Source: Sminthopsis crassicaudata
Lineage: Eukaryota
DNA: 64,000 nucleotides
Direction of reading: 5' to 3'
Assembly: GCF_048593235.1 (NCBI RefSeq)
Contig: NC_133618.1
Span: 683,190,361 to 683,254,360, forward strand
A program made the translations under genes and the position numbers. The notes beneath the pieces were generated by a model. It was given only the letters and a program-made list of their open reading frames with translations. It did no database searches and had not been told where the DNA came from. Below, in pieces: positions 9,501 through 52,850 of this stretch (position 1 is the first letter of the stretch; the number at the start of each line of letters is the position of its first letter).

Positions 9501-9662
9501 AGACCGGAACATGGATAGAACAGAGGCCAAAACACAGATAGAACAGAGACCGGAACATGGATAGAACAGAGGCCAAAACACGGATAGAACAGAGACCGGA
9601 ACATGGATAGAACAGAGGCCAAAACACGGATAGAACAGATACAGAAACGGGGATAGAACAGA
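6508..9662. repeat. 23-bp minisatellite array (~137 units) with higher-order duplications
   Basis: unit GAACAGAG(A/G)CC(C/G)(A/G)(A/G)ACA(C/T)GGATA; rare variants recur at 598 bp (gacccaaacgcag at 6581/7179 and 6696/7294) and 1035 bp (minus-strand stop variant at 8102/9137). Confidence 0.97.
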
Positions 9663-11085
9663 GAGAGACTGAAACAGATAAACAGAGACCCAGACAAACA
9701 AGAAGGAAGCAGAAGTCCATGAGGCCCCCACTCCTCTCCCTCATTCAATTCCTGCCCTAATCCTAGGGGAGCAAAGCTGGGCCTCTGCAGGCTAGGTGAG
9801 AGGAGCAGGAAGTCGTGGCTCTTGCCTCAGCTTCCTCCCTAGAGCTTAGTCCAGACTGGAAATGAAGGGGCAGTCACCTGTCCAGCCTGCACCTGAACCC
9901 TGGACGTGTCTGGGGGCCTTGCCCTGCTTGGGGGGGGACCCCTTCCATGACGGGACAGCCCCCGGGGGAGGAAGTTTGTTCAGAGATCCAGATCTGCCTC
10001 CTGGCAACCTCCTGTGGCGCCCCCCAAACCCCAGTCAAGAAGAAAACTCTTATGTCTCCTCTGTCCCCCTTCCGTATTCCTGCAGCTCTTCTCCCAGGTC
10101 CACTTCTCCAGGTCCTTTTCCTAACCCCAAGATGGCACCATCTGCGTCCTTCACTGTCCTGTTAACCAGCGCTGGTCCTCTGGGGGGCCCTCTCTCAACA
10201 TCCCCGAAGCCCGATGCTGGGGCCTGGCCAGGGCTGGGTGAACAAGCCCCCTCCCCCAGGACATTCGCCTCTCAGTAAGGCAGAAGGTGACTTCAGGAAC
10301 CACTCTGGACGTTGGGGGAGGGGAGATGGGGAAGTAGAAGGTCTCCCTTGTTTCACAGATGAGAAAATGGGGACCATTCGCCCAAGATCCCCCAAGAGTC
10401 GGGCTGAGCTGGGACTGGAATGATTTCATTTCCCTTTGAGTTTGTGACTCATCCCCCAGGGATCATTTCTGCATGAAAGGAGGTGTGAACTTTTCGAGCC
10501 AAGCCTCCCCCTCCATTTAGAAAGCTAAGAGATCGAAGAGAAGGGAGCACTTTTATCCCGATTCAGTGGATTTTGTCATGGGGGGGGGGGGGGCGTTCAT
10601 GAAGGTAACAGCATGGGCAAGCAGGAATGGGCTGCAATCTGCCTCAAAGGAGGGCACTCCCCCACAGAGGAGGGCGTGACTCCATTGAGAAGACTTTCTG
10701 CTTGTCCCGGTGACCGCTGGGGTCACTTCAGTTCTCCAGGCTGCTGTCCAGCAGGTCAGCCATCCTTCCACCCTTCACATGCACAAATTTGGGGACCCTC
10801 CTGTCTCGGCGCCATCCTCGTCCCGGACAAGAGCGCTCCCTGGCCCCGGGCAGGACCGATGCTCCGCGGGGGCAGCACAAGTTCGGCTCCGTGAGGGCAG
10901 GGCAGTGTTGTTTTGGTCTCAGTATCTAATACAGTAATATTCATTCTAAGAAATATTTCCTGGACCGAACCTCGTGACTCCCAGGCCAATGTGCCCACCC
11001 CAGGGGCAGGGCTGCTCGCATTGACCCCAAGGTCCCTCTGCGGCCGTCCCTCTCGCGTCCCGATGTGCCCCGATTCCTCCCCCAG

Positions 11086-12424: not shown

Positions 12425-13160
12425 TGGGCAGGGGTGGGGGCTCCCGGGGCACAGGGGTGGGGGCTCCCGGGACACAGGGGTGGGGGCTCCCGGGATACAG
12501 GGGTGGGGGCTCCTGGGGCACAGGGGTGGGGGCTCCCGGGGCACAGGGGTGGGGGCTCCTGGGATACAGGGGTGGGGGCTCCCGGGGCACAGGGGTGGGG
12601 GCTCCCGGGGCACAGGGGTGGGGGCTCCTGGGATACAGCGGTGGGAGCTCCTGGGGCACAGGGGTGGGGGCTCCCGGGGCACAGGGGTGGGGGCTCCCGG
12701 GACACAGGGGTGGGGGCTCCCGGGGCACAGGGGTGGGGGCTCCTGGGATACAGGGGTGGGGGCTCCCGGGGCACAGGGGTGGGGGCTCCCGGGGCACAGG
12801 GGTGGGGGCTCCTGGGATACAGGGGTGGGGGCTCCTGGGGCACAGGGGTGGGGGCTCCCGGGACACAGGGGTGGGGGCTCCTGGGATACAGGGGTGGGGG
12901 CTCCCGGGGCACAGGGGTGGGGGCTCCTGGGATACAGGGGTGGGGGCTCCCGGGGCACAGGGGTGGGGGCTCCCGGGACACAGGGGTGGGGGCTCCTGGG
13001 ATACAGGGGTGGGGGCTCCCGGGGCACAGGGGTGGGGGCTCCCGGGACACAGGGGTGGGGGCTCCCGGGGCACAGGGGTCGGGGCTCCTGGGATACAGGG
13101 GTGGGGGCTCCCGGGGCACAGGGGTGGGGGCTCCTGGGATACAGGGGTGGGGGCTCCTGG
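12425..13160. repeat. G-rich 23-bp minisatellite (~32 units)
   Basis: unit ACAGGGGTGGGGGCTCC(C/T)GGG(GC/AC/AT); produces periodic ORFs in all frames. Confidence 0.95.
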
Positions 13161-13397
13161 GGGCCCCAGCTGGAGGCATTGCCAAGGGAGCACGCATTTG
13201 CACATTTAGACTTTAAGAATAATAGTTCCTGCTTCCTCTCTAAGTTTGTAAAATGTTAAAATCGTGCAGCCTCTTAAAAAATAAAATGGAATTCAAGGAG
13301 TGGGGTGTTGGAGGAGCGGGTTCTGCAAGTGGCTGGAGATGGGGGGGTTAGCCATTAGTTCTACAGAGGTGAGCTGAGACTGCAGGGGTCAGGAGAG

Positions 13398-13643
13398 TGG
13401 CTGCTGTGGGGTACACTGAGACAGTGGGGGAAGTCGGGGTGCTGTGGGATACACGGAAACAGTGGGGAGAGTTGGGGTGCTGTGGGGTACACCCAGACAG
13501 TGGGGGGAGTCGGGGTGCTGTGGGGTACACCCAGACAGTGGGGGGAGTCGGGGTGCTGTGGGGTACATGGAAACAGTGGGGGAAGTCGGGGTGCTGTGGG
13601 GTACACCGAGACAGTTGGGGGAGTCGGGGTGCTGTGGGGTACA
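13398..13643. repeat. 38-bp minisatellite (~6.5 units)
   Basis: unit tggggggagtcggggtgctgtggggtacacccagacag with variants. Confidence 0.9.
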
Positions 13644-20900: not shown

Positions 20901-22640
20901 TCACCTGGGGTCACTTCTCACACTTCTCTCTTCCAAACCCCTCTTTTCCATCCCAGCAAAAAGCTTCTTCCCGTGGGCAAGAAGTCAATCCCCCAAAGAA
21001 GTTCTGGGTGGGTGGAATTATCTGAAAGGCAAGGGTGTTTTAGGTGCTCAATTTTGGGGAGGTGATAAGCTCTAGCTGGCCCATTGCCACCACACCATCC
21101 CTGTGGGCAAGGTTTGTAATTTGTTTCCTTAATTATACAACGGCTTTCTCTTTCTAGATGGTGTCTGATATAGCTCAGGGACAAAACCTTCTCCACTTCA
21201 GCCAAAAGGCTAAGTCGGGCTTTTCTCTTCTGCTTCCTGGATTTCTGCACAAAAATATATCCTTATAATCTAGAATGGGTCTGATTCCCCACGCCACCAT
21301 CTTGCCGTGGCTGTTTCCTTCCTTCCCTTCTTTTCCTTCCTCCTTCCTTCCTCCCTTTCCTATTTTCTCTCAATATTATTATGTGACTTTCTACAATGCC
21401 AACAAAAACTATGAACGTGAAGCGTTTGGAAGGCCCTCCATTCCTGCTGGTCAAGAGGTTAGTGGCAACAAGAGGGTTATTAAGCAGTGAAAGAATTCTC
21501 TCCTTCCCGAATTCTTAGTCGAAAAATGAAAGTTTGTGGTTGGGTGGAAATCACTTTGCCAAGGGACTGACTCTTGTGGTGGCAACGACCTATCCAGGAA
21601 ATGGAGTTTTGGAGCTGAGAACAGCAGCAGGGCCCTGGCAGCTGAGCGGGCCGCTGGGGCCATCTGCGGAGGGCTTGGCTCTAGGAAGCCGTCATATCGG
21701 GCACCTTGGTGGGGGCCGGGACAGCCCGGCCGATCCGACCAGGATTCCTCAATTGAATGAGAGCTAAGAACGTCTAAGGGAGTTGTTTAGCCCCCGCACA
21801 GCACTGCCTCTCTGTCCTGGGAGGATGCTTCTGAGCCCGGGAGAGCCTGATCTCAGAGCAGAAACGGGGACACACTCTCAGCGTGATCCTCTTAAAGGGA
21901 GCAGGCCCCCTCCCTCCCAGCACTGCTACATGCACAACGGGGCTTTTTCCTCTTCAGGGGGCCCTGAGTCCCGTGTGCAGAGACTGCGCCCAGTGGAAAC
22001 AAGCCGGGTAACTCCACATTTTGTCCAGAAAGGCCCCACTGGCGCATTTTTTCTTGTTACCAAGAGCATAAAAGGGGAGTTAAGGGAAAGTTCACTGGTT
22101 CCTAGCAGAGGAAAGAGGCTACATTCTATGTAACAAGCCAGCCCGCGGAAACTATCTACGCGGAAATGTTATTCCTAGAATAACGAGAGCCTGCTGGCTG
22201 AGAAGTCCCTGAATGGAGAAGAGCATGTACTGGAAGCCTCCCGAACAAGAAAGGCTTTGGGCACGCTGGAGGCTCGGGCTTGTCTTTCCTTGTTCGTGTT
22301 TTTAAACAACGGAAGCGTGCGCGGTCACGTTCTCGCGTGGGAGAGAACGCAGCGGCTTCGGTCCCGCTGGCAGAGTTCTCCAGAACCTTCTGGGCCTTTT
22401 ATCCTAGAACATCCTGTAAACAACCACCCCTCCCCCATCGGGATTCCGTTCTCCCCGGTACAAAAGAAAAGGGGAATGGGGAAGGTGCTCAGGGCGCCGC
22501 GGACCCGCATCTCAACCTCCATCTACAGAAAACAGACAGACAAGGAGGGAAAACAAACTAAAAGGCCCTTTGTTGCGGTGTCACGGGTACAAACGGTGCA
22601 GAAGCGGCGGATGGTCCGTCCCCCAGCGCTGGTCGCGGGC

Positions 22641-23867
22641 TCAGCAGCTCTCGCCCTCGTCCTCCGTCTGGGGCCAGGCTCTGGAGGGGGCGCGCGGCTC
22701 CCGGAGGCGCTGCTGGGCCTCCCAGTCGGCCTTGTCCAGCTCAAACTGGCGCCACTTCTCGGCCAGCTCGCGGTGCTGCTGCTCCAGGGTGACCCTCATC
22801 TGCTCGTGCCGCTGCAGCAGCTGCGCCTCGGACTCCTGCAGCTTCTGCACCTTCTCGCGCAGCTTCAGCTCGAACACCCGCTCCATCTGCGCCTCGAGCT
22901 CCCGCATGCGGGCCGCGTGCTCCTCCCTCTGCGCCCGCGGGCTGACGAGCAGCTGGGCCCGGCTCCGGGGCCGCGTCATGGCGGCCAGCTTGCGGCTGCG
23001 GTAGTTCTCGTAGTGCACGTTGTTGGTGACGTCCTTCAGGTCCTGGGTGTGGGTTCTCATCAGCATGTTTCGGAGGATGGTGAAGTCACAGTGATCGCCG
23101 TTTTCCACCTCGGCCACGCCCCAGGGGTACTTTCTCCCGCGGACCCTTCGCCCGTCGACCTCGACGATGGTGTTGCTCCCGACCACGGCGAGCGGCAGGC
23201 GGTCCTGGATCTTCTTGGCCGGCCTCCTGTCGCCCGCGTCGCCCGTCCCCGGGAACTCGTAGATCTTAATTTGGTGCTCCTGGATCTCCTGCATGATCCG
23301 CTTCTTGAAGCGCTGGCACTCCTCGGGCGTGAGCGTGTCGGCTTTGGCAATAAGGGGGATGACGTTGACCTTGTCGTGCAGGCGCTTCATGAACTCCACG
23401 TCCAGCGGCTTGAGGCCGCGGCCCGAAGGGGACAGGAAGTACAGGCAGCACTGCACCCTGTGGTCCGGCGTCTGCCGCCGGTACACCCGCGACTCGGCGT
23501 TCAGGTAGTCCTCGAACTTGCTGTCGATGTAGTCGAGGACGGGCTGCCAGCAGTTGCTGTTGTCCACCGCGTCCCCGAAGCCGGGCGTGTCCACGATGGT
23601 GAGCAGCAGCTGCCCGCCGCCTTCTTTGCGGAGGACTTTGGCCTGCTCCACCAGGGCGCTCTTTTCACTTCTGCGGGGGGGCCCCGGGGCCTCGGAAGAA
23701 TACAGGTCCGTGAGGAACAACGAGTTGATGAACGTGGACTTGCCCAGGCCGGATTCTCCCACCACCATCAGGGTGAACTCGAAGCCCCTCTTCACCGACT
23801 TTCTGTACACTTGATCCGGGAGATTGGCAAAGCCCACGTAGCCTTGGACGTTCTTCGCTTGAGCCAT
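22641..23867 (-). CDS. SEPTIN7: intronless septin-7-like retrogene, 408 aa
   Basis: single [34 protein letters not shown]...; GGCGCCATGG Kozak context; G1 GESGLGKS, G3 DTPG, G4 AKAD, septin unique element and coiled coil present; no introns, stops or frameshifts. This is a retrocopy, not the parental multi-exon gene. Confidence 0.9.
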
Positions 23868-23869
23868 GG

Positions 23870-24350
23870 CGCCCCCGCCGCCGGCTCCGCGGCCAGCCCA
23901 CTGACCCGCGTCCCCTCGCGGGGGCCCTGTCCATTCTCCGACGCCACGGGCGCCCTGACGCAGCCCAGCCGGCGCCGCGCCCCAGGCGCTCGCTTTCGGG
24001 ACTTCGGGGTTTGCCCGGGCGATTCTTCTTCCGGCAAAGTCTCGGACGAATGGGCTCCTCGGTCCTTTCCTCTGGGCCCGCAAGCTAGGCTGGCGGAGCG
24101 GCGGCCAGTCTTGTTGAGGGGAGGGCCCCGGCTGGCCCGAGACCTCCCGAGGGCGTTTCTGCAGCCGTTGGGGCTCCGGAGATTATTCGCTGCTCTTTCC
24201 TTGCTTGGAGTCGTCTCGTGTGGGGCTCTCCGCTGCCGTTCTTCCCGGACGGTGGCTCTCTCTGGATCCCGAGCCTGGAGGCCGCGGGCGGGAAGTTCCC
24301 TTCGTAAAGGGCCAGGTCCCTAGCACGACTTTGTCAGGTCCCGATTTTAA
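23870..24350. promoter_or_regulatory. CpG-rich 5' region of the septin retrogene
   Basis: dense CpG immediately upstream of the ATG at 23867. Confidence 0.5.
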
Positions 24351-26339
24351 GGCTGTTGTCAAGCCCACTTCTCCCACCCCGTTCCGACTTCCCAAAGCTG
24401 CTTTTCGTGTGTGCGACCTCTTCCTTCACTGGGCCACAGGACTTCAGAAGCCCTGCTTGTACCCTCGAGGTCTCGGGTCTCCTGCCAAACAGCGTCATTT
24501 TGGGTTGGAACATCGTGCTTCTGGGTTCTTTCTGGCAGTGTCTGTGCCTCCCCCCCTCCCCCCCACCCGGGAAGCGCCCAGAAGGGAGTCCTAGTTTCCC
24601 TGGGTGTCCGCTTGGCTGAGATCCGGGTGAGTCTTTGCCCATCCTGGACACCGGCCAGAGAAGAGGGCAGACTAGACCAAGAGCAAGAAAGCTGCCTTCC
24701 CTCCCAGAAGGGAGGAATGGCCACCCCCCCCCACTTCTCTCGAGCCTGGGCCGCAGGGATGCTGCCTCCTCCATTCTGGGCAAGACCCACAGACGATTTC
24801 TCTGCACAAAGAGCCTCCAGAGGGGATCCTGGAAAGATGGTGGGATGGGTGGGAAATTCCCTGCAAATGACTTGAAACAATATTTCAAGTGACACTTTGG
24901 AGAGGCAGAAATAAGGAAAGTGAGGGCAAAGCCATCCTCCAGCCTGACGGGACTGGGGAAGGAGGCCGGAAAGACTTGCCCCATCTGGGTTTTGTGGTCT
25001 GGCCAAGCTACACACGGGTTGTCTCAACAAACAGCAAACCTTGGGCTGCTCTGTGGGTGGCAGGAGCCCTAAAGCTTCAGGAACTTTCACTCCATGGTCT
25101 CTGGGATGGTGAGAGTGTGTGTGGGGGGGTCTGGCTGATCAGGGAAGACTGAGGGGTTCCCTGCTCGGGTTCCATGACAAAGAGGACAGATTGTGGTCTC
25201 TCCTGGGACGGAGGTTCCAGGACAAGGTGAGTGAGCCAGGGAAGATTGGAGGTGGGGTCCATTCTGGGACCTGGGCAGAGAGTGTTTGCAGTGGAGCCTG
25301 CAGGGACCTGGGTAGGGAGGGCTGAGTTCAGGGTGGCGAGGAGTACTGGAGGTAATTCCTAAACAAAATGGGAGCTGGAGGAGCAGAGCCCTACTTGGCC
25401 TGGGGTCACAGCTCATTGGAAGAACCAAGAAGTCAAAGGTCTTCAGTGGAGCTCTGAAAACTCCCAAAACCCTGGAGCCTGAGACCTCATCCCACCACCC
25501 TGGGAGCAAGTCCCCAAGCCAACGTGGAGTTAACAGTTAAGAACCAGCCTAAGAGTACACAGCAGAAACATGATCTGACCCCCTAGTGTTCCCATGATGA
25601 TAGAGAAGGTCGGGCTCAAACAGACTCACCTAGACCAGAACCCTCCTCTGGCCTGGGACATGCTCAGAGCTGGTTGGAGCCGGAGAATCTGGACACAAAG
25701 GGAAGCAGAGTTCAATTCTATGACACAAAGGGAAGCTGAGCTCCTTTCTAAGTGGGAAAGCACTTGCAAGTAGGAGCTCCGCTTCCTGAGCACGAGGGCT
25801 TGGGGTTCTGGGGCAACAGCCCAGGGAGGCTGGACCACGCCATCCTCACTCTCAGCTGTTCCCTATGGACAAGGCCAAGTTCCTGGGTCTTGTGGGAATA
25901 GTCTCACAGACACAAACAGAACCAGTTAGCGCATTGAAGGTAAAATCTGGCTTAGTTCTCAAGCAGAGAATTCAGCAATCGTGAACCCATGGAGGTGTGA
26001 GGGATGGCTCTCAAGTCCTGGGAAACAAGGGGAACCAAATCCCTCATGGAACACTTGGTGCTGGTGACACTTTGTCAGAAGGTGAGAACATCCAGAGCGC
26101 AAAAGGATTATTGTGATGGCAAGTTCAGCTGCTTGCTGGCCTAAGGCTCTAGGAAACGGTGCCTCCAAAATATTTCTGCCAAAGGAAGGGGGTCGGGAAA
26201 AACCTAGAAGGAGACAAAGAGGAGAACCGTAGAATAAGCCTTATTCTCAGGACAATTCTGCTTCTCTGCCTCCAGATATAGAGATTTCAGCTTGGTTTTC
26301 CAGTTTTGAAACTTCAGAGAAGTTCAGCTTATATGTCAT

Positions 26340-29300
26340 TTGCTACCTCTATCCTTGCCTAACTCTTGTACCTGATACAATGTTTGATAGAATTCACTTG
26401 TGAATCTGCCGTACTAGAACTTTTTCTTAGGAATCTCACTTAAGACTTGTTCTGCCTTTTAAAATTAGAGAAAGATACTTTAAAAAATAGAAAAATAATT
26501 TCATTTTCTATATCATTATCAATACAATTTATGTGTAAAATCCAAATAATCTTTAATTTATAAAACCTTAATCCAGTTTTGAGAAATTATTACTAAAACT
26601 CAAAACAAATAAATAAATTTTGGAGCTAATCGTATACATCTGTGCATAGTTCTTAGAGAACATAGTCTAGTCCTATTGCTTTTCTCAACAGCAGAGGTAG
26701 AGAAAAAACTGGGGAAAGAAATAAGAGTAATGCCACAAAATTATGAAAAGATTCAACAGTTGGGAAAAGAGCTTACTGAAGAAAACTCCTTATAAATTAC
26801 AAAAGGAAGCTAGTGACTTCCTAAGAAATTAAAACAAATCTTAAAAACAAAATCAACAGTATGAAAAATAGAAGAGAACATGAACTATCTCATTGGAAAA
26901 ATAACTGACCTGGAAAGCAAATCAAGGAGAGACAGTATAAGAATTATTGGACTACTGGAAAATCATAATTAAAAAAAAAAGATAATTTCAAGAAGTTATT
27001 AAGGAAAAATGCCTGAAATTACAAAACTAAAGGGAAAAATAGAAACTGAAAAAAAAAAAAATCCACTGATCACTGCTTGAAAAAGATCCCCAGATAAAAA
27101 CTCACAGTAACATTGTAGCTGTGTTTCAAAGCTCCTGTGTCAAGCAGAAAAGATTACAAGCAACTATAAACAAACAATTCAAGTATTGCCTTGCTGCAGT
27201 CAAGATAATACAAGATTTAGCAACTTCTACATGAAAAGTCTGAAGGGCTTATACTATATTCCAAAGAGCAAAGGAGCTGGGTTTGCAATCAAGATTAATC
27301 TACTCAGCAAAGTTGAATGTAATCCTGCAAGGAAAAAAAAAAATGGAAATTTAATGAACAAAAGGACTTTCAGACATTTTTGAGGAAAAATCCAGAGTTA
27401 AATAGAAAATTTGACTTTCAAATTCAGGAGGAACATAAGGAGGTAAAGGGATTTAATAAGGCTAAACTGTTTGCTGTCCTATAGAAAGTTATATCTATGA
27501 CTCTTAAGAATGCTGTATCATTTGTAGGATAGTTAGAAAGAGCATATATAGGTAGAGGAACTGGGTTTGAATTGATTATAATGGGATGATACCAAAAGGT
27601 AAAATCGAGTAGGGAGAGATAAAATGGAGCAAATTATCTCACACAATCAGGTGTGAATGGAAGAACCATTATGGTGTCTGGCAGAAGGGGGTGGAGGGCT
27701 GGTAGTGCTGGAATGTTATTTTCATTAAGCCTGGGTTTAAAAAAGGGAATAACATACATCCAGAAGGCTATAAAAGGCTTCTTAAAGAGAAATAGGAGAA
27801 TGAGGGGAAAGGATAAGGGAAGAGACTCTTAGAAGAAGGTATGGATTAGGGAGCAATGGTCAGAAGTAAACTACACTTATGAGGTGAGAGAGAGGAAGAA
27901 GAGAAAGAAGGATAAATAGTAGGGAAAATAGGGTGGAGGGAAAAATACAACTAGTAACTAACTTTCAATGTGAAGGGGATGAAATGGAAACAACAGAATG
28001 GATCATAAATCAGAATCCAAAAATATGTTGTTTAAAAAAACACACATTTGAAAATGAGAGACACACAGAGTAAATACAAAAGTTGGAGTAGAATTTATTA
28101 GGCTTCAGCTGATGTAAAAAAAAAGTAGGAGTAGTAATATTGATCTCAAAGCTAAGACTAAAATAGATGTAATAAATATTGTGTTAAAAAGTACTGTAGG
28201 GGGCAGCTAGGTGGCATAGTGGATAGAGTACCAGCCCTGAAGTCAGGAGGACCTGAGTTCAAATCTGTCCCAGACACTGAACACTTCCCAGCTGTGACAC
28301 CTTGGGCAAGTCACCTAACCTCAATTGCCTCCCCCTCAAAAAAAAAAAAAAAAGTACTGTAGATAATAAAGTAATATCAATACTAAACATATGCACCAAA
28401 TATTGTATCATCCAAATTTATAACGAAAAAGGGAAATGAAAATAGGTGGAACTATTTAGCAAAATCCCAAGAGCAAAACTGATAAATCTAAGAAATCGAA
28501 AAGTCAAGGAGATGAGCAGACTCTTAGATAAGCTAGTTATGATAGCTATCTGTAGACAACTGAATGGGAATAGGAAGGAATATAGTTTAACTGGGCCATG
28601 TGGCAACTCTCTAAAATTTGACCACATAGTGACCATATATAAAAGTCTCTGCAGAAAAGCAGAAATATTAATGCATACTTTTCAAATCCTAAGGCAATGA
28701 TAATTACATTTAATACAGGATTGTGAAAACACAGATTAAAATTTAATTGAAATTAAATAACCTTAAAGAATGAGTGGTTTTGGAACTTAAAATACTTTTT
28801 AAAATGTTAAATATCATTTTAATAAATAATACAGGAAATATAATATAAAATATTATATATGTATTTTTAAAATGAGCGGTTCAAAGAGCAAATCATGGAA
28901 ATAATAATTTTATTAAAGAGAATGATAATGAGGCAACATACCAGAACTTAAGGGATGCAGCAAAAGTGGTAATCAGAGAAAAACTTATATCTCATAATGC
29001 TTACATCAATAAAATAAGGAACAGATCAACAAAATGAGTATACAGTTTTTAAAAAGTAGGAAAAAAACATTTAAAATGCCCAATTAAACACCAAATTGGA
29101 AATTTTGAAAATTAAAGGTGAGATTAATAAAATTAAATGTAAGAAAACCATTGAATTAATCAATCGATAAAACTCAGCTGCTTTTCATGGGAAAAAATTG
29201 TGGAAATGTTAACAAAATATTAAAAATATTAAAATATTAAAATTTAAAATGTTTTTTTTAATTTAGTTAATATGATTTGAAAAAAGAGAGAAGAAAACAT

Positions 29301-29660
29301 CAACTAGTATCAAAAATGGAAAATGAATACACCACTAATGAAGATGAAATTAAAGCAGTTATTAGGAATCATTTTGCCCAATTATATGCAAATCAACTTA
29401 ATTTAAATGAAATGGAAGAGTCTTTGCAAAAAAAATAAACTGCTTAGATTAACAGAAGAGGAAAATGAACATCTAAATAAACCTGTTTTTAGAAAAAGAA
29501 ATTGAATGGTCCATAAATGAGCTTCCTGGGGAAAAAAGGTATCAGGATGAGAGAGATTTACAAGGAACATTACCAAACATTTAAAAATCAACTAATTCCG
29601 GCATTAAGGAAAATTATCTGAAATTAATCGGGATAGGAGGAGGCCCACCACACCCCTTTT
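26340..29660 (+). mobile_element. degraded L1 (ORF1 3' half, inter-ORF region, ORF2 endonuclease and downstream part)
   Basis: ORF1-like segment near 26890-26960 (TDLE-RSRRD-RIIGL type) and ORF2-like segments from ~27960 to ~29660; many stops; AT-rich. Confidence 0.85.
28200..28348 (+). mobile_element. tRNA-derived CORE-SINE nested in L1
   Basis: ggggcagctaggtggc head, poly(A), 14-bp TSD aaaaagtactgtag (28186-28199 and 28349-28362). Confidence 0.9.
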
Positions 29661-29759
29661 ATGAAACAAAGGAGCCTCGGCTCAGAGCAAAACCAGAAGA
29701 AGAAAATGGGGTGGCTCAAAGCAAGGGCGGAGAGCCAGGGGGTTCATGGGGGAGCGCCC

Positions 29760-30343
29760 GCGGGTGCGGTGCACACACACGTTCTCAGCGTGCACACGTG
29801 CAAACATTCTCAGCATGCACGTGCCCCTAGGCACACGCAGCGTACATCCATGCACACACGGACACACGATGCACATACATAGCCAGTCCACAATGTTTGC
29901 ACACACAGCATACATCTATACACATGAGTGCATAATACACGTGTGTACATGCTTCCCTTGCACACAAGGTACTCACATATCCACACACAGCACACACCTA
30001 TGCACATGTGTGCACACGATGCACATGTATAAACATGCGTACACCTTACACACACACTCCCAGTGCGCACTGTGCTTGCCCACGTAGACAAGCACACACC
30101 CACACGGTGCACTCACATGCAGCACATACGCGTGCTTGCACACACAGCATGATAGGCACACAGCACACACGCGCACAGTGCAATCTAGCCACATACACCC
30201 GGATGGGCGCGTAATACACACCACTACACGTGGCTTGCACGTGCTTGCACGCACGGCACACACCTATCCACACGGCACACACGTGACAGCTCCCCGCCCT
30301 GCACACAATTCACTCACAAAGGCAGTACGCCGCGCGCGCGCGC
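29760..30343. repeat. (CA)n/(CACG)n-rich low-complexity tract ending in (CG)6
   Basis: long imperfect alternating purine-pyrimidine sequence; cgcgcgcgcgcgc at 30331-30343. Confidence 0.8.
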
Positions 30344-32738: not shown

Positions 32739-35700
32739 TCACTGCACGGGCACCGCCGCCCTGGGCACGGGCATCGGGGCCGCCGCCTTCCGGCTCCTCT
32801 CGGCCGACAGGCGCTCCAGGCGCTCCGTGTAGAAGCCGTTGAAGTCCAGCCTGTGGGGGAAGGGAAGCGTGGGCCCCGCGTGAGACTGGGGGGTTCCCGC
32901 CCCCCCATTCCCCCCCCCACCGGCCGCATCCCAGAAATACTTTGCCTTTGGCACTGGCTCCCCAGAGGAAATGGCAAAGCCAAGGCTGGGGGGGGGGACG
33001 GTGCTGGGGTGTCGCCCGTTTACCACCTTCTCCTGGGGTAGCGCCAAGCCCTGGGGAGAGCCCCTTGTGGGGGAGGGAGGGGAGGCTCCGCAGAGACAGG
33101 GCGAGACAGCCCTATCCCCAGCCCCCGTAGGGGGGCCTGTTTCGGATCCCCTCGCCCTCTCCCCTCCATGACTCCGGGATGGCCTCCGAGAGGGCTCAGT
33201 GGGGGGGGGGGGAGCCGGCCTTTCCCCGGGCCCCCCGCACCTGGAGATGACGCTGACCATGCTGTGCTCGCAGTCGTTGGTGCTGAAGACGCTCAGCTTG
33301 TCCAGGAGGTCCAGCAGGTGCGCCGAGAAGTTCTTGTCGAACTTGGTGATGGTGGCCTCGAAGCCGGAGGTCATCTGCAGCGCGTCCACGTGCTCCGCCA
33401 GGTGCTGGGAGAGCCCGCGTCTGAGCCCCTCCCCCGCTGGGCCTGTCCCCCGACCTCCCCCGCAGTGCCCCGTTCTCTCCCCACAGCCCCCCCTTCGCCC
33501 CCCGGGAGCCGCGGCCGCTACCTTAGTGGCCAGTTTCCTCTTGAGCGCTTCCTCGGCCCGCTCGGCCTCCGTGGGGGGGCCCAGCATGGTGCCGGGCTCG
33601 GCGGGGGGGCGGCCCAGCTCGCCGTCCAGCTTCATGCTCTGGGTGAACCTCTGGGGGGAGAGGCCGGTGAGAGCGGCGGCGGCGGGGCCCGGGGCCCCGC
33701 TCCGAGGCCCCCCCCCCCCCCGTCCCCCCGCCCCCGCTGACCTGCATGCAGTTGGTGAACATGACGCAGACGGACATCAGCTTGGAGAAGACCTTGAGCA
33801 GCTCGGGGTTGGTCAGCATGCAGTCCTTCAGGCAGTTGTCCAGGAAGCTGGTGTGGTGACCCAGCACGTCGTCGATGTTGGAGGCCTGCGGCGAGGGGGG
33901 CGCTCAGGGCGGGGGCAGCTCCCCGGGGGGACGCGGACGCCCTCGGGGTCAGGGACACCCCGCGCTCACCGACTTCAGGTTCTTCTCCAGGATGTGCCAG
34001 GTCGGCTCCATGACCTCGAACATCATGTAGTACTGGATGTTCTGGACGAAGTTCAGCATGCGTTGCCTCAGCGTGAAAGCCCCGGCGAACCTGGGGGCCA
34101 AGAGCACGCCCACAGGAATCCCAAGGTTTCGGCCGCTGTCGGCGTCCCCCGGTCCCCGGATCCCGCCCATTCCCCCGAGGGGGACACCGAGGCAGCCGGT
34201 GAGGGCCAGGCGGGGGCCCTGCAGCTCCCTCCCTCGCGGCACGTACCACTTGGCGCAGTGCAGGGAGAACTGCTTGGCCGTCTTGTTGCTGATCCAGACG
34301 TTGCAGAGCTGCCGCTCCACGTGCTTGCAGTAGAACATGTGGCGGAAGAGCATCTGGTAGCGCGTGAGCGCCTTCCTGGGGCGGAGGGAGGGGGCTGGCG
34401 TGTGTGGAGGGGGGCCTGGCCGCCCAGCTGATGCCAGCGTGGGCCCCCCTCCCTAAGGCCGCCACACGTGGCCACGACACACCCGTGGGCACACGCCTCT
34501 TGCGTCACATACACACACTGCCCCCTACAGCCCCCAGTGGGCCCCGGACGACGTTAGGGGGAAGGAGCGGAGCCCCCTGCTCTGAGAGGCCCCTGGGGGG
34601 GGCTCCCCTACCTGTTGATGATCAGCGACAGCGGCCACTTGACGATGTAGTCGAAGGAAAAGGCCTCAAGGCCGCTCAGAGTCAGCTCCGTGGGGTCGGC
34701 GCTGAGGATCGACTTCTCCTGCTTGGTCTCGATGGCGAGGACGCGCAAGAGCTGCGTGATGAGGTCGTGGGGCATCAGGTCAATCTGGAAGGGGGAGACA
34801 AAGGAGGGGGCTTGGAGCGGGGCCGGCCCTTGGAGCCCCCACGGTGGAGTTCTAGAGGGAGGGCAGTGAGGGCCCCCGGCCCAGGCCCCCACCAGACCTT
34901 GAAGCCTGCAAGTGGCCACCCCGACCTGTGCTCCCGGAGCCTCGGGGCGCCCCCACCTTCAGGTCGTCCTTGAAGGGGTCCGTGTTGGCCGTGCTCATCC
35001 TCAGGGCCAGCTCCAGCAGCGCCTCCAGCCGGGTCGGGATGATGTCGTCCACCGGCTTCTTGAGCTCCTCCTCGGTCAGGTCCATGAAGTGCACGAAGAA
35101 GTCGCCCTGGTCCATGAGGAAGTAGTGCTTGATGGACCTGCGGAGACCCCGGGAGACGCTGCCGAGCCGGCCCCCAAAAGCGGGCTGGAGCTCTGAGGAG
35201 GCGCCGGGACGGGCCACGCCAGGAGGGGGAATCACGTGGAGGGGCACATGGGGGGGGGCCGTGCCGAGAGGGACCAGGAGTGGGGGGCCCACCGGGAGGG
35301 GGCCGTCACCTCAAGTGCGCCACGAGCTCCTTCTCCTCCATCAGGAAGTCCAGCAGCACGCGGCTGGCGTAGTTGAAGGCCTTTTCGATCTGCTCCACGT
35401 AGGCGCGCTCCTTCAGCGTGTAGACGATCTCCTTGGCCACGGGGCACGTCACGTCGTGGCCGCACTCTCGGACCACGTTCAGGTACTTGCCTGGAAGGAG
35501 GGGGCCGGGAGAGACGGTCGCCGAGCCGCGGGGCCCCTCGGGGGCCTCCCCACCCCTCTGCCAGCGGCCCCTCCCTGCCATTCTTGCCCCAGCTCTGCCC
35601 CCTACTCGGGGCAATCGGGGGAGGGGAACAGCCACTAACAGGAGCCTCCAGAGAAGGACGCAGAACTGGAGGCCCTGCCTCGTGACCCGGGCTCCCCCAG

Positions 35701-38700
35701 AGCTCCCCGCGGGGACCATGGCCTGCGCCAGAAGGGCCCTGGGAAGGGGGCGGGGAGACTGAGGGGACGGCGGTGCTGGAACTCTGTCTTCCCAGAAATC
35801 AGCCGGAGTCAGGGTCACTAAACGTCTTTATTCTGGATCTTTTACGGTCAAGGTCAGGGGTTAGGCCTAGCAACCTCACACACACCTTCCTCCCTCAAAC
35901 GCCAGGAGAGAGTGAGCGTGAGCGTCTCACTTCCCCTTCCTCCCCCCCCCCACGTCACTTCCCCCTCTTTGTCCCACCTGGGGAGGGTCCCACTGGCCAC
36001 TAGTCTCCCGTGCTCCGTTACCCAAGTGCTCAGTTCTAGCCCTTTGCACCGGGGAACCAGCTCTACCCTGACTGCAGCGCGTGCGGGGCCCTGAAACAAG
36101 CTGGGGGGGGAAGGAGGGACAGACATGGGGGGAGGGGGAGAGAGGGGAGACAGACAGAAGCCCCCCACCTGTACTGAGGATCTTGTCGGCCATCTTCTGG
36201 AGGAAGGAAGGGATCTGGGGCTGGACCACGGTGTACCGCTGGTCCCAGTACTTGTCGTTGTAGTCCTCCTGGATCTTCTCCTTCTGCAGCTCGTGCTCCT
36301 CCACCATGAACTCGCTGGGCCGGGGGAGAGGAGGGAACGGAGCTCCAGCACAGAGGGGGGGGAGGGGCCTCCCCTCAACAAGCGCCGCCTGGGCCCGGGC
36401 CGGGCCGCACTGACCTGTAGGGGTCGTTGATGATCCCGCGGTAGATCCACTTCTCCAGGATCTCAAAGTAGGGCACGCTGGCCGCCTTGGTCAGGTAGAG
36501 GCAGAGCTCCTGGGCCTGGCTGTCCCCCGTGTAGTTGAAGCTTCGGTCGTGGAGGAGGCTCAGCGTGGCGCCCCCCAGGCACTCCCCTTTGTCCACGGAG
36601 GTGGCTGCGGGCAGGGAAGGGCGCGTCAGCGAGGGAGGCTGCTCCCGGAGCTGGGGTCCCCAGGGGGAACGGCCAGGACCGACAAGGCCCAGAAGCCTGA
36701 CCGGGAAACGGCGGGTCACCGACGGGTCCCTGCGGCCGGAGGTCACGGACGCCCGCCCCCGGCCGCCACGCCGTCGAGCTGCCTCTCGAAGCTTCCCCGG
36801 GGGACCTTCCCACTGAGACTCGGGGAGCCGTCACGCCCCGCTCCCACTGTGCAAGGTGAGGCTCCAGGCATCTCTCCTGACCCCCCGAGTGTCCGTGCCC
36901 GCCCCGCCAAAGGGCCGGGGGAGGCTCACCCAGGGAGGCCAGGATCTCCATGGTGCGCATGGTGGGCTGGATGTAGAACCAGAGCTTCTGCAGGGAGAGC
37001 AGGCCCTGACGCTGCAAGTGCTCCAGCTGAGTGACCAGGATCATGTACTCCTTGACCAGCGTCCGCATGGCGGCCGCCAGGGCGTGATTGACCTGGCCGT
37101 ACTCGAAGGAGGACTTCTCCTCTATGAACCTGCGGGGGAGGCCGGGAGGCTCGGAGGACGGGCTCCTCCCCCCGCCCTCCCTGCCTGGCCGGCCAGAGCG
37201 ATGGGAAGAGCGTGGCCCAGAGGGAACCCGGCTCAGGGCGATCCCAGCCCGGCCAAAGCCCAGCTCCGGAGCGGGAGGAGCCAGCCGGGGGAGACAAGGG
37301 GCCGGGGTGACCGGGAGGAGCGGGGACCCCCGGGGGGCAGGAAGACCAGGCCTCCCCTGAGTCTCGGCCGGGAAGGAGAGGTCAGCGCAGGGAGGCCAGA
37401 GAGGAGCCCGGGCCCAAGAGGCAGGGGGCACTTGGGGGCAAACCACGAGGGGGGGGCCGAGCCCCGGGCACAGCAGGGGTGACCGGAGGGCGTAAAGTCC
37501 CCGACGGCGTCCGCGGCGAGGGGCTCCGCTGCCGTCCCAGGCCCGGCCTGCCTCAGTCTGGCCAGCCGGCCCCGGGGAGGAGAACCAGGCTCCAGGTAAT
37601 GGAGGCTCCCGGGCCGGTCACAACCTGCGGGAAGGAGGCAGGGAGCCCCTCGGAGGGAGGCCGGAGGGTCAAGGCCGACACCCAGGCGCGCACCTGGTCA
37701 CTGTGGAGTAACTTGCGGCCACCGGCAGGATCCGGTTCACCAGCTCCTTCACGGACATGTCCAGGTTGGGGTCCACGAGGAAAGTGCGGCTCTGCCGGCC
37801 GAGCAGCGCCTGCGCCGTGATGTAGCGCCCGTCCACGCCGACCAGCAGGTACAGCAGGTCCTCCACGACCGTGGCCTCCTGGGAGGCCAAGGGCAAGCTG
37901 CCTGCGGGAAAGGGCACGAGCTCCGTCACTTTCCAGCTCCCGAGAGTCGTCGGGCGCCGTCCGGCGGCCTCCCCGGAGGGGTCCCGGCCCGGGGTGGAGG
38001 AGCAGAAGCTGAAGTGGCCAGAGGAGAGCCAGATGGGGTCCCTGGGGGGCTTACAGAGCTCCCCTCACACAGGGAGGAGGAGGGGGAGCCCCTCAGGAGG
38101 ACGCTGCCCAGCAGGAAGGGGAACGGCCGGGCGACCTCCATCCTCCCCAGGAAGGAAACAACATCGGAGTCGCCACAACATCAGAGGCCCTCCCCCGCCC
38201 CCTCTGGCCCGGAGCTCTATTCCACAAAGGGTCCCAGGAGGGGGGAAGGGTGGGGAGTCCCCAGGACCCCCCGGCTCACGGGCCCCCGGGGGGGGGGGGC
38301 GTACCGATGGGAGCGGGCGAGTCCGAGCCGACCCCGGAGCCCACCAAGAAGTCCCCGATCAGGGTGGGCCTCTCGTAGACCCAGGCGGGGAACACGGGCA
38401 GGTGGTGGCCGCAGTTCCTCTTGCTCTGTTTGTCACGGAGCAGCTTCCGCATCAGTTCCTGAGACTGAGAGTTTGGGTTTTTAGTGAGAAAAAAGGGGCT
38501 TTCCCTCGGTGACTCCGGAGGAGGAGAACGGCGGCCGCGATCGCCCACGGGGAGCGAGGAAGGAGCTGGGGCGCCTCCTCTTCCCATCGGGGGGTTCTAG
38601 GCTGCAGCTGCTGTCACCCTCCCGGACCCTCGCTGACCCCTGCTGCCCGAGGTCGGGGAGGGGGCCGCATCCGGGCCTCCGCCAGGACACAGGGCAGAAA

Positions 38701-49549: not shown

Positions 49550-51525
49550 GATCTCACAGTAGGGCAGAAAAGAGGGCTTCTGGTCAGGTTCCTAGTTCTG
49601 AAAACAGCTGCACAAAACCCCTGAAACTTGGGAGGGAACTCTCTATTCTGGAAGCAGAGCCCCGCTTTAATAAAAAGTTAAAAGCTGAGTAACAGAATAG
49701 GAAAATGAGCAGGCAACAGAAAAAAGATTCTGACGATAGAAAGTTACTATTGTAGAGGGCCAGGACTGGGTAAGTCCACATACAAGAAGAGTCCAGTCCA
49801 GATCTCAAGTAATAACTGGAATGGACTCTTTCTGTAAGTGGACTTATTAAATAGTGGTCCTCTACGTGCTATGATGACAAGGAAGGTCAAAACACACTCA
49901 GAAGATAACAAAGTCAATACGCAGAGTCTCCAAGAAAAATAAGAATTGGCTCAGGCTATGAAGAGCTCAAAAGAAATTTTGTAAATAGAGTAAGAGAGAT
50001 AGAGGAACAATTAGGAAAAGAAATGAGAGTGGTACAAAAGGAAATATAACAAGCTAATGAGGAGAAAAAGATCTTAAAATGCAAAATTGACCAAATGGGA
50101 AAGAAGGTACAAAAACTCACTGAGGAAAATAATTCCTTAAAAATTACAATTGAGAAAATGGAAGCTAATGACTTTATGAGAAATTAAGAAAAAATAAAGC
50201 AAAACAAACAAACAAAAAAGAAAAATAAGCAAGGGAAATGTGTAATATCTCCTTGGAAAAACAACTGACCTGGAAAATAGATCCAGGAAAAATAGCTTAA
50301 AAGTTATTGTTCTACAGGAGGTCATTATATACTTCAACAATACTACACGATGACCAATTGCCACCAATAGAGCAGTAATGAATTGAACAGCTACACCCAG
50401 CAAAAGAACTCTGGGAGATAACTATGAACCACTACATAGAATTCCCAATCCCTCTATTTTTGTCTGCCTGCATTTTTGATTTCCTTCACAGGCTAATTGC
50501 ACACTGTTTCAAAGTCTGATTCTTTTTGTACAGCAAAATAACTGTTTGGACATGTATACATATATTGTATTTCATTTATATTTTAACATATGTAACATGT
50601 ATTGGTCAACCTGCCATCTGGGGGGAAGAGGTGGGGGGAAAGAGGGGAAAAATTGAAACAAAAGGTTTTGCAATTGTCAATGACGAAAAATTACCCATGC
50701 ATATATCTGGTAAATAAAAAGCTATAGTAAAAAGAAAAAGAAAAAAAGTTATTGGTCTACTTGAAAGTTATAGTCAAAAAAGGAGCTTATACATTATCTT
50801 TCAAGAAATTATCAAGGAAAACTTATGTTTTTCTAGAACCAGAATGTAAAATAGAAATTGAAAGACTCCATGGATCATATCCTAAAAGAGATTCCAAAAT
50901 GAAAACTCCCAGAAATATTATAGCCAAATTCCAGAACTCTTAGGTCAAAGAGAAAATATTGCTAGTATCCAGAAAGAAAGAACTCAAGTATAGTGGGGCC
51001 ACAGTCAGAACAACACTAGATTTAGCAGCTTCTATATTAAAGAAACATAAGACTTGAAATACGGTATTCCAGAGAGCAATGGAGCTAGGATGACAACCAA
51101 GAATCACCTACCCAACAACACAATAATTCTTCAGGGAAAATGATGGATATTCACTGAAAAAAGAGGATTTTCAGGCATCCACAATGAAAAGACCAAAGCT
51201 GAATGGAAAATTTGATTAAAAAAAAACCAAAAAACAAAAACACTATTCAGGAGAAGCATAAGAGGGTAATCAGGAAGAGATAGCACAAAAGATTAATAAG
51301 GTTTATTTGTTTACAGTCCTACATGGGAGGATGATACTTGTAAACTTATTAGAACTTTCTCATTATTATGGCAGTTTGAAGGAATATAGAGAGAGGCTCC
51401 AGGTGTGAGTTGAATATGAAGGTATAATATCTTTTAAAAAAGGAAATGAAAGGGTGAGAGAGGAATATACTTGGAGAAAGGGAAAAAGAAAAGTGGAATG
51501 GTATAAATTATCTGCCATAAAAAGA

Positions 51526-51560
<35 letters not shown>

Positions 51561-52460: not shown

Positions 52461-52529
52461 TTTGTTAGAGTGGGAGATAGATGGTTTGTTTTGTTTTCCT
52501 CACAGCATTACTTTTTTGGAAATGTTTTT

Positions 52530-52850
52530 ATTTTATTTATTAATTTTTTATTAAAGCTTTTTATTTTCAAAACATATACATGGATAATTTTTCAACATTG
52601 ACTCTTGAAAACCTTGTGTTCCAAATTTTCTCCTCCTTCCCCCCTCTTCCTCCCCTAGATGTCAAGAAATCCAATATACGTTAAACATATTAAAATATAT
52701 GTTAAATCCAATATATGTATACATATTTATGCAATTATCTTGCTGCACAAGAAAAATCAGATCAAAAAAGGGAAAAATGAGAAAAAAAATGCAAGCAAAG
52801 AACAACAAAAAGAGTGAAAATGCTATGTTGTGATCCACACTCAGTTATAT
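52530..52850 (-). mobile_element. L1 3' end, antisense
   Basis: ttattaaagctttttattttcaaaacatatacatgg... is the antisense of the L1 terminal motif. Confidence 0.75.

What the first reader, a model, noticed from the sequence alone, without database searches (positions are those of the whole stretch)
22641..23867. Intact, GC3-rewritten SEPT7 retrogene: a candidate lineage-specific septin
Seen: 408 uninterrupted codons, no introns, optimal Kozak, CpG-rich upstream region, third positions overwhelmingly G/C. All GTPase motifs are retained, while the N-terminal extension, the linker before the coiled coil and the C-tail have diverged. Established: SEPT7 is the only member of its septin subgroup in mammals and is multi-exon. 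Inference: extensive synonymous change without a single disablement points to purifying selection on a second SEPT7-class subunit; retrogenes of this kind are often testis-expressed.
Basis: partly seen in the sequence, partly recalled or inferred. Interest (0 to 1): 0.7.

Follow-up and report, generated by a model that had tools for sequence, protein, structure and literature searches.

The report
Conserved dasyurid SEPT7 retrogene, GC-rewritten
This is a real, intronless second copy of the cytoskeleton gene SEPT7 that carnivorous marsupials (dunnart and antechinus) have kept intact for over 20 million years; it is a sound but fairly ordinary lineage-specific retrogene, unusual for its extreme G/C enrichment and for changes at the surface where septins choose partners.

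Summary
Window 22641-23867, minus strand, is an uninterrupted 408-codon septin gene, closest to SEPT7, with a near-ideal Kozak context. GC3 is 0.92, and the CpG island covers the gene and its upstream 0.5 kb.

The genome is the fat-tailed dunnart. Antechinus flavipes has a 408-aa "septin-7-like" protein (XP_051838768.1) that is 94% identical and shares 79 derived replacements, so the copy predates the dasyurid crown (about 21-29 My).

Evidence for purifying selection:
- dN between the two species is about 0.029, against an expected neutral 0.056-0.08.
- The C-tail changes ten times faster than the rest (p=8e-6).
- Second codon positions took only about 10% of the W-to-S flux seen at third positions.
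- There are no indels in either species or in four read sets.

One small run holds a contig covering just the CDS plus 50/78 nt at about 54x against 7x or less in the flanks, which looks like an unspliced mRNA.

Caveats:
- The switch-I Thr is Ser in dunnart, and the trans-loop-1 His is Arg.
- The scan held no earlier septin note.

The parts
22641..23867 (-). Coding sequence of the SEPT7-derived retrogene, 408 codons plus TGA
   Evidence: ORF list and sequence. Pfam Septin PF00735, E 1.3e-114, profile 1-276/280. Best solved relative is human SEPT7 2qag_C, E 3.4e-204, against SEPT2 at 5.9e-109.
22563..23917 (-). Transcript-like unit: CDS plus about 50 nt 5' and about 78 nt 3', unspliced
   Evidence: Runs X7/X11 (one data set filed twice) hold a single contig of 1351-1355 nt at depth about 54. 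Depth is 7 or less upstream and 0 downstream, and there are no joints. The tool's RNA label is a guess, and the strand is not shown by contigs.
23868..24400 (.). CpG-island promoter region; the island continues through the CDS
   Evidence: GC 0.68 and CpG o/e 0.89. The contig breaks at 23917/23919, where depth steps tenfold. There is no ATG between 23868 and 23917, and no in-frame ATG up to 24083.
23736..23759 (-). G1 / P-loop GESGLGKS (residues 37-44), unchanged from SEPT7
23643..23675 (-). Remodelled switch I (residues 65-75). Twelve replacements fall within residues 58-85. Codon 70 is Ser in dunnart and Thr in Antechinus and SEPT7.
23406..23429 (-). Trans loop 1, PSGRGLKP. The conserved His is Arg at codon 150 (23418-23420) in both species.
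   Evidence: The role of this His in G-interface partner choice is from PMC7056273.
23292..23315 (-). Alpha4 helix. The residue matching human SEPT7 Gln210 is Arg at codon 190 (23298-23300) in both species.
   Evidence: Position mapped through the table in PMC7056273.
23337..23348 (-). G4 motif AKAD, unchanged
22704..22928 (-). Coiled coil (residues 314-388). It is 38% replaced, mostly K>R, M/V/I>L and E>Q/D, and 94% identical between the two species.
   Evidence: It still matches the SEPT7 coiled-coil crystal sequence 8sjj_C at E 3e-21.
22644..22691 (-). C-terminal tail (residues 393-408). The polybasic SEPT7 tail (net +5) has become acidic (-3 dunnart, -1 Antechinus). It evolves fast, with 7 of 16 residues differing between species, and Q400E is polymorphic.

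Best explanation
This is a protein-coding retrogene, made from a spliced tetrapod-type SEPT7 mRNA. It inserted downstream of TUBGCP2, in a GC-rich, minisatellite-rich region, before the dunnart and antechinus lineages split.

After insertion it went through a fast early phase. Nearly all synonymous sites moved to G/C, and about 80 amino acids were replaced, mostly towards residues with GC-rich codons. Since then purifying selection has held the G domain, linker and coiled coil, while the C-tail drifts.

It is transcribed from its own CpG-island promoter as a short unspliced mRNA.

Inferred mechanism: the protein takes the SEPT7 slot in septin hexamers or octamers. It keeps the nucleotide-binding motifs, the alpha0 polybasic stretch, the septin unique element and the coiled coil that pairs with SEPT6-group septins. 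Its G interface is retuned at switch I, at trans-loop-1 (His to Arg) and at the alpha4 position of SEPT7 Gln210 (to Arg), and the basic tail is lost. These changes probably alter which partner it meets across the G interface (another SEPT7-class subunit or a SEPT3-group septin) and how it is regulated.
For: Identity:
- Pfam Septin E 1e-114. SEPT7 is far the best solved relative.
- The tree puts the copy inside tetrapod SEPT7, support 93/96. It has the tetrapod-type C-terminus and the isoform without the alternative exon.

Retro-origin:
- The full protein is encoded without interruption.
- Its neighbours are TUBGCP2-like exons at 33.7-37.1 kb on the same strand and ZNF511. No GCP exons were found below 31 kb.

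Conservation:
- Antechinus XP_051838768.1 has the same length, is 94% identical, and shares 79 replacements.

Selection:
- dN is 0.029 (0.019 without the tail). The neutral expectation is 0.056-0.080, Poisson p 7e-5 to 1e-10.
- Tail versus rest, p=8e-6.
- The W-to-S flux at position 2 is 0.08-0.12 of that at position 3.
- Four read sets show 3 SNPs and no indel in the CDS, against 31 SNPs and 7 indel sites in 4.7 kb of flanks (Poisson p about 0.04, my arithmetic).

Transcription:
- One contig covers the CDS plus short UTRs at 54x against 7x or less in the flanks.
- Its 31-mers are present in some small runs and absent from others of the same studies.

G-interface reading:
Against: - No nucleotide sequence of the Antechinus copy or of the parental SEPT7 could be fetched, so dS is assumed from published figures, not measured. 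With the lowest neutral estimate, omega is about 0.5.
- Synteny of the Antechinus gene was not checked.
- No counterpart protein is on record for the devil or any other annotated marsupial. The gene may be lost or broken in some dasyurids.
- 20 of 209 G-domain positions that are invariant from shark to mammal are changed, which could mean relaxed constraint rather than a new role.
- The RNA label of the runs is a guess. The strand is unknown, and no canonical poly(A) signal lies near 22563.
- No protein evidence exists.
Confidence: 0.75

Rival explanations
1. It is a transcribed processed pseudogene. The reading frame survives because GC-biased gene conversion in this region fixes W-to-S changes, which almost never create stops. 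There is no protein function.
For: Only 1 of 856 possible W-to-S changes makes a stop. The antisense strand carries a 688-aa ORF from composition alone. Replacements are strongly compositional, with GARP gain 34 against loss 5. About 10% of deeply invariant G-domain sites are changed.
Against: Biased conversion does not prevent frameshifts, yet both species keep the same 408 codons, start and stop. Rates differ tenfold between the tail and the rest. Second positions were about tenfold protected relative to third. Fourfold sites are 96% GC while the flanks are 51-66%, so the CDS is not simply at the regional equilibrium.
Confidence: 0.12
2. It is an old DNA-level SEPT7 paralogue (pre-mammalian or early vertebrate) that lost its introns, not a marsupial retrocopy.
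For: The stem branch is very long: 0.49 changes per site against tips of 0.026-0.059. At the crown rate that would take over 200 My. The AU test of placement outside all vertebrate SEPT7 gives p=0.065, not formally rejected.
Against: The best tree places it inside tetrapod SEPT7, support 93/96. It shares the tetrapod-type C-terminal indel and the spliced isoform lacking the alternative exon. Complete loss of every intron is the signature of retroposition. No such paralogue is on record in any other vertebrate among 5.8 billion proteins.
Confidence: 0.04
3. The retrocopy has replaced the multi-exon SEPT7 in dasyurids and is their only SEPT7.
For: I could not show the parental SEPT7 in dunnart with the tools available.
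Against: NCBI names the Antechinus protein 'septin-7-like', not septin-7. A sole SEPT7 would not be expected to change 16% of its G domain and lose its basic tail, when SEPT7 stays over 90% identical from fish to mammals. Its 31-mers are missing from several small runs of the same studies, which is odd for a ubiquitous essential gene.
Confidence: 0.03
4. The locus works mainly as RNA or as a CpG-island regulatory element, and the ORF is incidental.
For: The CpG island covers the whole unit. There is low-level coverage upstream of the presumed start.
Against: Codon-position asymmetry and domain-specific conservation are protein-level signals.
Confidence: 0.05

Closest known systems
SEPT7 (human septin-7; PDB 2QAG chain C, 7M6J chain C)
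   Same: Same family and subgroup, with about 73-74% identity over the full length. The G1, G3 and G4 motifs, the alpha0 polybasic stretch, the septin unique element and a SEPT7-type coiled coil are kept.
   Different: It is intronless and sits at another locus, beside TUBGCP2/ZNF511. It lacks the first 19 aa. Switch I is remodelled, the trans-loop-1 His is Arg, and the Gln210 equivalent is Arg. The acidic loop is neutralised (net -5 to 0). The basic tail has become acidic. GC3 is 0.92.
Antechinus flavipes 'septin-7-like' XP_051838768.1
   Same: 408 aa, 94% identical, with the same start and stop, the same two in-frame deletions and 79 shared derived replacements. It is the same gene in a species of the other dasyurid subfamily.
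   Different: 24 residues differ, 7 of them in the last 16. Antechinus keeps the switch-I Thr and is closer to the parent (tip branch 0.026 against 0.059). It is an automatic annotation only, and its locus could not be inspected.
Drosophila Sep5, a retrogene of the SEPT6-group septin Sep2
   Same: A functional septin retrogene, partly redundant with its parent and filling the same slot in the complex (PMC4938648 and the O'Neill & Clark 2013 title cited there; PMC3690201).
   Different: It belongs to a different subgroup (SEPT6, not SEPT7) and a different phylum. No comparable GC rewriting is reported.
Young mammalian SEPT7 retrocopies (for example rat 'septin-7-like' XP_038954020.1; human SEPT7 pseudogenes once called SEPT13)
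   Same: They show that SEPT7 mRNA is often retrocopied (papers mention SEPT13 as a pseudogene).
   Different: The rat copy still sits in the same 90%-identity cluster as SEPT7. It is young and shows no sign of long retention. The dasyurid copy is old, diverged and conserved between subfamilies.
GC enrichment of functional retrogenes (Mordstein et al. 2020, PMC7181179)
   Same: Functional retrogenes have higher fourfold-site GC than their parents (median +11.5%), whereas retro-pseudogenes have lower. This gene follows that direction.
   Different: This case is extreme: 96% GC at fourfold sites against flanks of 51-66%. GC-biased gene conversion in a minisatellite-rich, probably subtelomeric region may add to it. 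That is an inference.

Membership tests
Septin family (Pfam PF00735) | Septin-type G domain with P-loop G1 (GxxGxGKS/T), G3 (DxxG) and G4 (xKxD) | tested here: met
   Pfam E 1.3e-114 over profile 1-276/280. [14 protein letters not shown] and AKAD are present.
Septin family (Pfam PF00735) | Septin unique element at the end of the G domain | tested here: met
   The Pfam match runs to profile position 276 of 280. The YPWG...HYENYR stretch has only 4 conservative changes.
SEPT7 subgroup | Closer to SEPT7 than to any other septin subgroup, and placed within SEPT7 on a tree | tested here: met
   SEPT7 E 3e-204, against SEPT2 6e-109, SEPT3 7e-87 and SEPT6 1e-76. It sits inside tetrapod SEPT7, support 93/96.
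SEPT7 subgroup | Long C-terminal coiled coil of SEPT7 type | tested here: met
   It aligns to the SEPT7 coiled-coil crystal sequence 8sjj_C at E 3e-21. Core hydrophobic residues are kept or swapped M/V/I>L.
SEPT7 subgroup | Switch-I 'catalytic' Thr, as in GTP-hydrolysing septins | tested here: inconclusive
   It is Ser in dunnart (codon 70, AGC) and Thr in Antechinus. Whether Ser supports hydrolysis is not testable here.
SEPT7 subgroup | Conserved trans-loop-1 His (psgHGlkp in SEPT7) | tested here: not met
   It is Arg in both species. Conservation and role of the His are from PMC7056273, which notes yeast Cdc10 has Lys here.
Functional retrogene | Intronless copy of a multi-exon parent at a different locus | tested here: met
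   One ORF is collinear with the whole SEPT7 protein, and no read joints were seen. It lies beside TUBGCP2 and ZNF511. The multi-exon structure and location of the parent rest on established knowledge and were not tested here.
Functional retrogene | Poly(A) remnant and target-site duplication | tested here: inconclusive
   No A-rich tract was found. Only weak, chance-level direct repeats exist, for example 15 nt with 13 matches at 22278 and 24189. This is expected for a copy older than 20 My.
Functional retrogene | Open frame kept in independent lineages, with non-synonymous change below neutral | tested here: met
   Two dasyurid subfamilies keep 408 codons. dN is 0.029 against an assumed neutral 0.056-0.080. 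Rate heterogeneity gives p=8e-6. The position 2 to position 3 flux ratio is about 0.1. Codon-level dN/dS was not possible.
Functional retrogene | Transcription | tested here: inconclusive
   There is a transcript-shaped contig at 54x in one data set. The run's RNA label is the tool's guess, the strand is not shown, and the tissue is coded.

The most novel reading that the evidence does not exclude
Dasyurid marsupials have evolved a second SEPT7-slot subunit whose G interface is retuned at three places: trans-loop-1 His to Arg, the SEPT7 Gln210 equivalent to Arg, and a rewritten switch I. Its basic tail has also been lost. It would therefore change the choice between hexamers and octamers, or the SEPT3-group partner, in particular tissues. 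That would be a natural experiment on the rules of septin assembly. It arose while biased gene conversion or selection for GC-rich intronless mRNA rewrote the gene.
Probability: 0.2. Interest if true: 0.6.

Novelty: new member of a known kind. Interest (0 to 1): 0.4.

Why it matters
SEPT7 is the only member of its subgroup in mammals and sits at the centre of every canonical septin rod, so any second SEPT7-class protein is worth knowing about. This one carries changes at exactly the residues that a yeast study proposed to steer G-interface partner choice. That gives a concrete, cheap biochemical test.

It is also an unusually clean case for a second question: whether GC enrichment in retrogenes comes from biased gene conversion or from selection for expression of intronless mRNAs. 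Here the parent's protein fixes the ancestral second-position composition, and the flanks give the local background.

The class itself is common, however. Lineage-specific functional retrogenes are frequent in this genome and elsewhere, and the Antechinus copy is already in RefSeq as an automatic model.

Tried and rejected
I could not fetch the Antechinus locus, any devil, quoll or opossum locus, or a parental SEPT7 CDS. There is therefore no codon-level dN/dS, no synteny check and no dating of the insertion.
- All sequencing runs offered were of the same organism, so reads could not supply another species.
- Searches with the C-terminal 113 aa and the N-terminal 225 aa, looking for fragmentary counterparts, found none above SEPT7 level. 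Given the database's coverage, that blank is weak evidence.
- The dunnart protein itself is not in the protein collection.
- Cluster listings gave no marsupial SEPT7.
- The poly(A) and target-site-duplication search was negative or at chance level.
- I first scored two CDS SNPs as synonymous. Translation showed that 22905 C>A is M321I. Within-species counts are therefore 2 non-synonymous and 1 synonymous, too few for pN/pS.
- The AU test of 'retro + mammals' did not finish in time. SEPT7 is too conserved among amniotes to resolve that anyway.
- I considered that the gene lies in a TUBGCP2 intron. This was rejected: GCP exons run only from about 37.1 to about 33.7 kb, and none were detected in 24-31 kb or 1-22.5 kb on that strand.
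- Literature searches found no paper on a marsupial SEPT7 retrogene.
- I did not fetch the unnamed Logan SEPT7 cDNA contigs, because their species is unknown.

Full report
**What is there.** On the minus strand, an ATG at 23867 opens 408 codons that end in TGA at 22641-22643.
- The protein matches Pfam Septin at E 1.3e-114 over almost the whole profile.
- Among solved structures it is by far closest to human SEPT7: E 3.4e-204, against 5.9e-109 for SEPT2 and weaker for SEPT3, SEPT6 and SEPT9.
- The alignment to SEPT7 is collinear from the internal Met of SEPT7 to the last residue. The only gaps are two in-frame deletions of 5 and 4 aa in the linker. Every intron of the parent is therefore absent.
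- The start context is gggcgccATGG.
- GC1/GC2/GC3 are 0.64/0.39/0.92. CpG observed/expected is 0.89 across the CDS and the 530 bp upstream, falling to 0.18-0.40 beyond.
G1, G3 and G4 are intact, but the switch-I Thr is Ser in this species, and the conserved trans-loop-1 His is Arg.

**Whose genome, and where.**
- I found TUBGCP2-like exons on the minus strand. GCP_N_terminal matches lie at about 36.9-37.1 kb and about 35.3-35.5 kb. GCP_C_terminal matches step down from about 35.1 to about 33.7 kb.
- No such exons appear among 146 minus-strand ORFs in 24-31 kb and 1-22.5 kb.
- The septin gene therefore lies at least 7 kb beyond the 3' end of TUBGCP2, on the same strand, in intergenic DNA.
- The surroundings are far more GC-rich than the 36% reported for the genome. 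Values are 51-66% beside the gene and 65-74% at 30-46 kb.
- The region also holds large minisatellites. That is typical of chromosome ends, though this is an inference.

**Relatives.**
- In a search of 5.8 billion proteins, one hit stands apart: Antechinus flavipes XP_051838768.1, 'septin-7-like', 408 aa and 94% identical.
- Everything else is ordinary SEPT7 at 74% or less.
- SEPT7 itself is so conserved that fish and mammal sequences share one 90%-identity cluster.
- Against positions invariant in five amniote SEPT7 proteins, the two marsupial proteins share 79 derived replacements and both deletions. They differ from each other at 24 sites. They are one gene inherited from a common ancestor.
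- Dunnart (Sminthopsinae) and Antechinus (Dasyurinae) span the crown of Dasyuridae, dated at 20.6-29.3 My (PMC5715987).
- A maximum-likelihood tree puts the pair inside tetrapod SEPT7 (support 93/96). The stem is 0.49 changes per site, and the tips are 0.059 (dunnart) and 0.026 (Antechinus).
- Placement outside all vertebrate SEPT7 costs 7.4 log-likelihood units (AU p=0.065).
- The pair also has the tetrapod-type C-terminal indel and the isoform without the alternative exon.
- No counterpart, whole or fragmentary, is on record for the devil or other marsupials.

**Is it under selection?** Four independent lines say yes, moderately.
1. *dN against a neutral expectation.* The 24 differences need at least 27 nucleotide changes over 943 non-synonymous sites, so dN is 0.029 (0.019 without the last 16 codons). 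A published rate of 1.37e-9 per site per year (PMC9290055) and the dates above give a neutral divergence of 0.056-0.080. That would predict 53-75 non-synonymous changes (Poisson p 7e-5 to 1e-10) and several frameshifting indels. None occurred. The implied omega is about 0.25-0.5. It rests on an assumed dS, not a measured one.
2. *Rate heterogeneity.* The tail differs at 7 of 16 residues, the rest at 17 of 392 (Fisher p=8e-6). The 21-aa linker is 52% changed from SEPT7, yet identical between the two species. A decaying pseudogene would not show this.
3. *Codon-position asymmetry.* The parent's protein fixes its second-position GC at 0.289. The copy has 0.389, with 44 of 283 weak sites converted and 4 of 115 the other way. 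Third positions of codons with an unchanged amino acid are 92% GC. Whatever GC3 the parent had (0.35-0.65), the W-to-S flux at second positions is only 0.08-0.12 of that at third positions. The protein was therefore shielded while the gene was being rewritten.
4. *Polymorphism.* Four read sets (three independent) show 3 SNPs and no indel in 1227 coding bases: Q400E, M321I and one synonymous. The 4.7 kb of flanks show 31 SNPs and 7 indel sites (Poisson p about 0.04 by my arithmetic).

- Of the 856 possible W-to-S changes in this CDS, only one makes a stop. Of the 1592 S-to-W changes, 97 do.
- The antisense strand carries a 688-aa ORF purely from composition.
- So 'extensive synonymous change without a stop' is weak evidence by itself. 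The missing frameshifts and the tests above carry the argument.

**The GC rewriting.**
- Replacements on the stem are strongly compositional. Gly/Ala/Arg/Pro were gained 34 times and lost 5 times. Phe/Tyr/Met/Ile/Asn/Lys were lost 33 times and gained 3 times.
- Fourfold sites are 96% GC while the flanking DNA is 51-66%, so the CDS exceeds its surroundings.
- Two non-exclusive causes fit. One is GC-biased gene conversion focused on the CpG island in a recombination-rich region. The other is selection for GC-rich synonymous sites in intronless mRNAs.
- The second is documented for functional retrogenes: median +11.5% at fourfold sites against parents, while retro-pseudogenes go the other way (PMC7181179).
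- The stem is about twelve times longer than the mean tip. Either there was an early burst of change, or the origin is much older than the dasyurid crown. I cannot tell which without other marsupial genomes.

**Expression.**
- All 24 runs offered are of the same organism, and none is on record as RNA.
- In X7/X11 (one data set filed twice, 74 Mb of contigs), a single contig of 1351-1355 nt covers 22563-23917 at depth about 54. Upstream pieces stand at 5-7 and nothing lies downstream. No joints were reported.
- That shape, with sharp tenfold steps 50 nt before the ATG and 78 nt after the stop, fits an unspliced mRNA and not genomic DNA or a chromatin library. The RNA label is a guess, contigs do not show strand, and the tissue is coded.
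- There is no ATG in the 50-nt leader. No canonical poly(A) hexamer lies near 22563; the nearest AATAAA on that strand is 2.1 kb further on.
- Other small runs of the same studies hold none of the gene's 31-mers. That would fit restricted expression or merely low depth.
- X1 and X13 cover all 5.9 kb evenly and say nothing about transcription.
- Testis expression is untested.

**How it probably works (inference).**
- *Kept:* everything SEPT7 needs to sit in a septin rod, namely nucleotide-binding motifs, the alpha0 polybasic stretch, the septin unique element and a coiled coil whose core residues are preserved.
- *Changed:* the changes cluster. Twelve replacements fall in residues 58-85 (switch I). 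The trans-loop-1 His becomes Arg. The residue matching SEPT7 Gln210 in helix alpha4 becomes Arg. An acidic loop goes from net -5 to 0. The polybasic tail (+5) becomes acidic.
[quoted passage not shown] It notes that an Arg at the alpha4 site favours homodimerisation of the Cdc3 subunit, and that Cdc10 carries Lys instead of the His (PMC7056273).
- From established knowledge of rod order (2-6-7-9-9-7-6-2, PMC8928218), SEPT7's G interface faces SEPT9-type septins in octamers or another SEPT7 in hexamers.
- My best reading is therefore an alternative SEPT7-slot subunit with altered G-interface preference and altered tail regulation. This step is a hypothesis, not shown here.

**Comparison and novelty.**
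- Septin retrogenes are known: Drosophila Sep5 from Sep2.
- SEPT7 is often retrocopied in mammals, for example a rat 'septin-7-like' still in the parent's 90% cluster.
- Old conserved retrogenes are common in this genome (earlier notes).
- The Antechinus copy is already an automatic RefSeq model.
- I found no paper on it, and the scan held no septin note.
- It is a new member of a known kind, of moderate interest.

Noticed in passing
window 22257-24323 (+): A 688-aa ORF runs antisense to the septin gene and beyond it. It appears to be a by-product of GC3-rich codons, since antisense stops need TTA/CTA/TCA sense codons, and not a gene. It gave no family match of its own.
   Followed up: partly
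window 33700-37100 (-): TUBGCP2-like exons (GCP_N_terminal, GCP_C_terminal) sit in a compact block of 65-74% GC. The last part of the C-terminal domain (profile 241-309) was not detected, so the 3' end of the gene is only roughly placed at 31-33.7 kb.
   Followed up: partly
window 6509-9664: A 3.1-kb minisatellite: about 137 copies of a 23-nt unit (TRF reports periods of 46 and 115), 90% matches and strongly A-skewed. It creates spurious ORFs of over 1100 aa.
   Followed up: no
window 12429-13162 and 13402-13643: Two further G-rich minisatellites: 23-nt unit x 32 and 38-nt unit x 6.4. Together with the arrays at 39.8-40.2 kb and 41.3-41.9 kb, the region looks subtelomere-like.
   Followed up: no
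window 26000-30000 and 50000-53000: AT-rich blocks (31-36% GC, A-skewed on the plus strand) with no ORF over 113 aa, inside otherwise very GC-rich DNA. They are probably decayed LINE insertions. This was not tested.
   Followed up: no
window 22670, 22905, 23397, 22503: Within-species variants were seen in read sets. Q400E has the E allele in 3 of 4 sets, and E is also the Antechinus state, so the reference Q may be the derived allele. The others are M321I, a synonymous V157 change, and a 10-nt insertion 138 nt 3' of the stop.
   Followed up: partly
window 23919-25594, 26010-26200: Low-depth contigs (5-7x) in the transcript-like run lie upstream of the septin start but not downstream of its end. 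This is possibly divergent transcription from the CpG island. The strand is unknown.
   Followed up: no
protein P0129 (rat XP_038954020.1): Rat carries an annotated 384-aa 'septin-7-like' protein with a mutated P-loop region (GLEKS) and G3 (GLGG). It still lies in the same 90% cluster as SEPT7. It looks like a young, probably decaying retrocopy.
   Followed up: no
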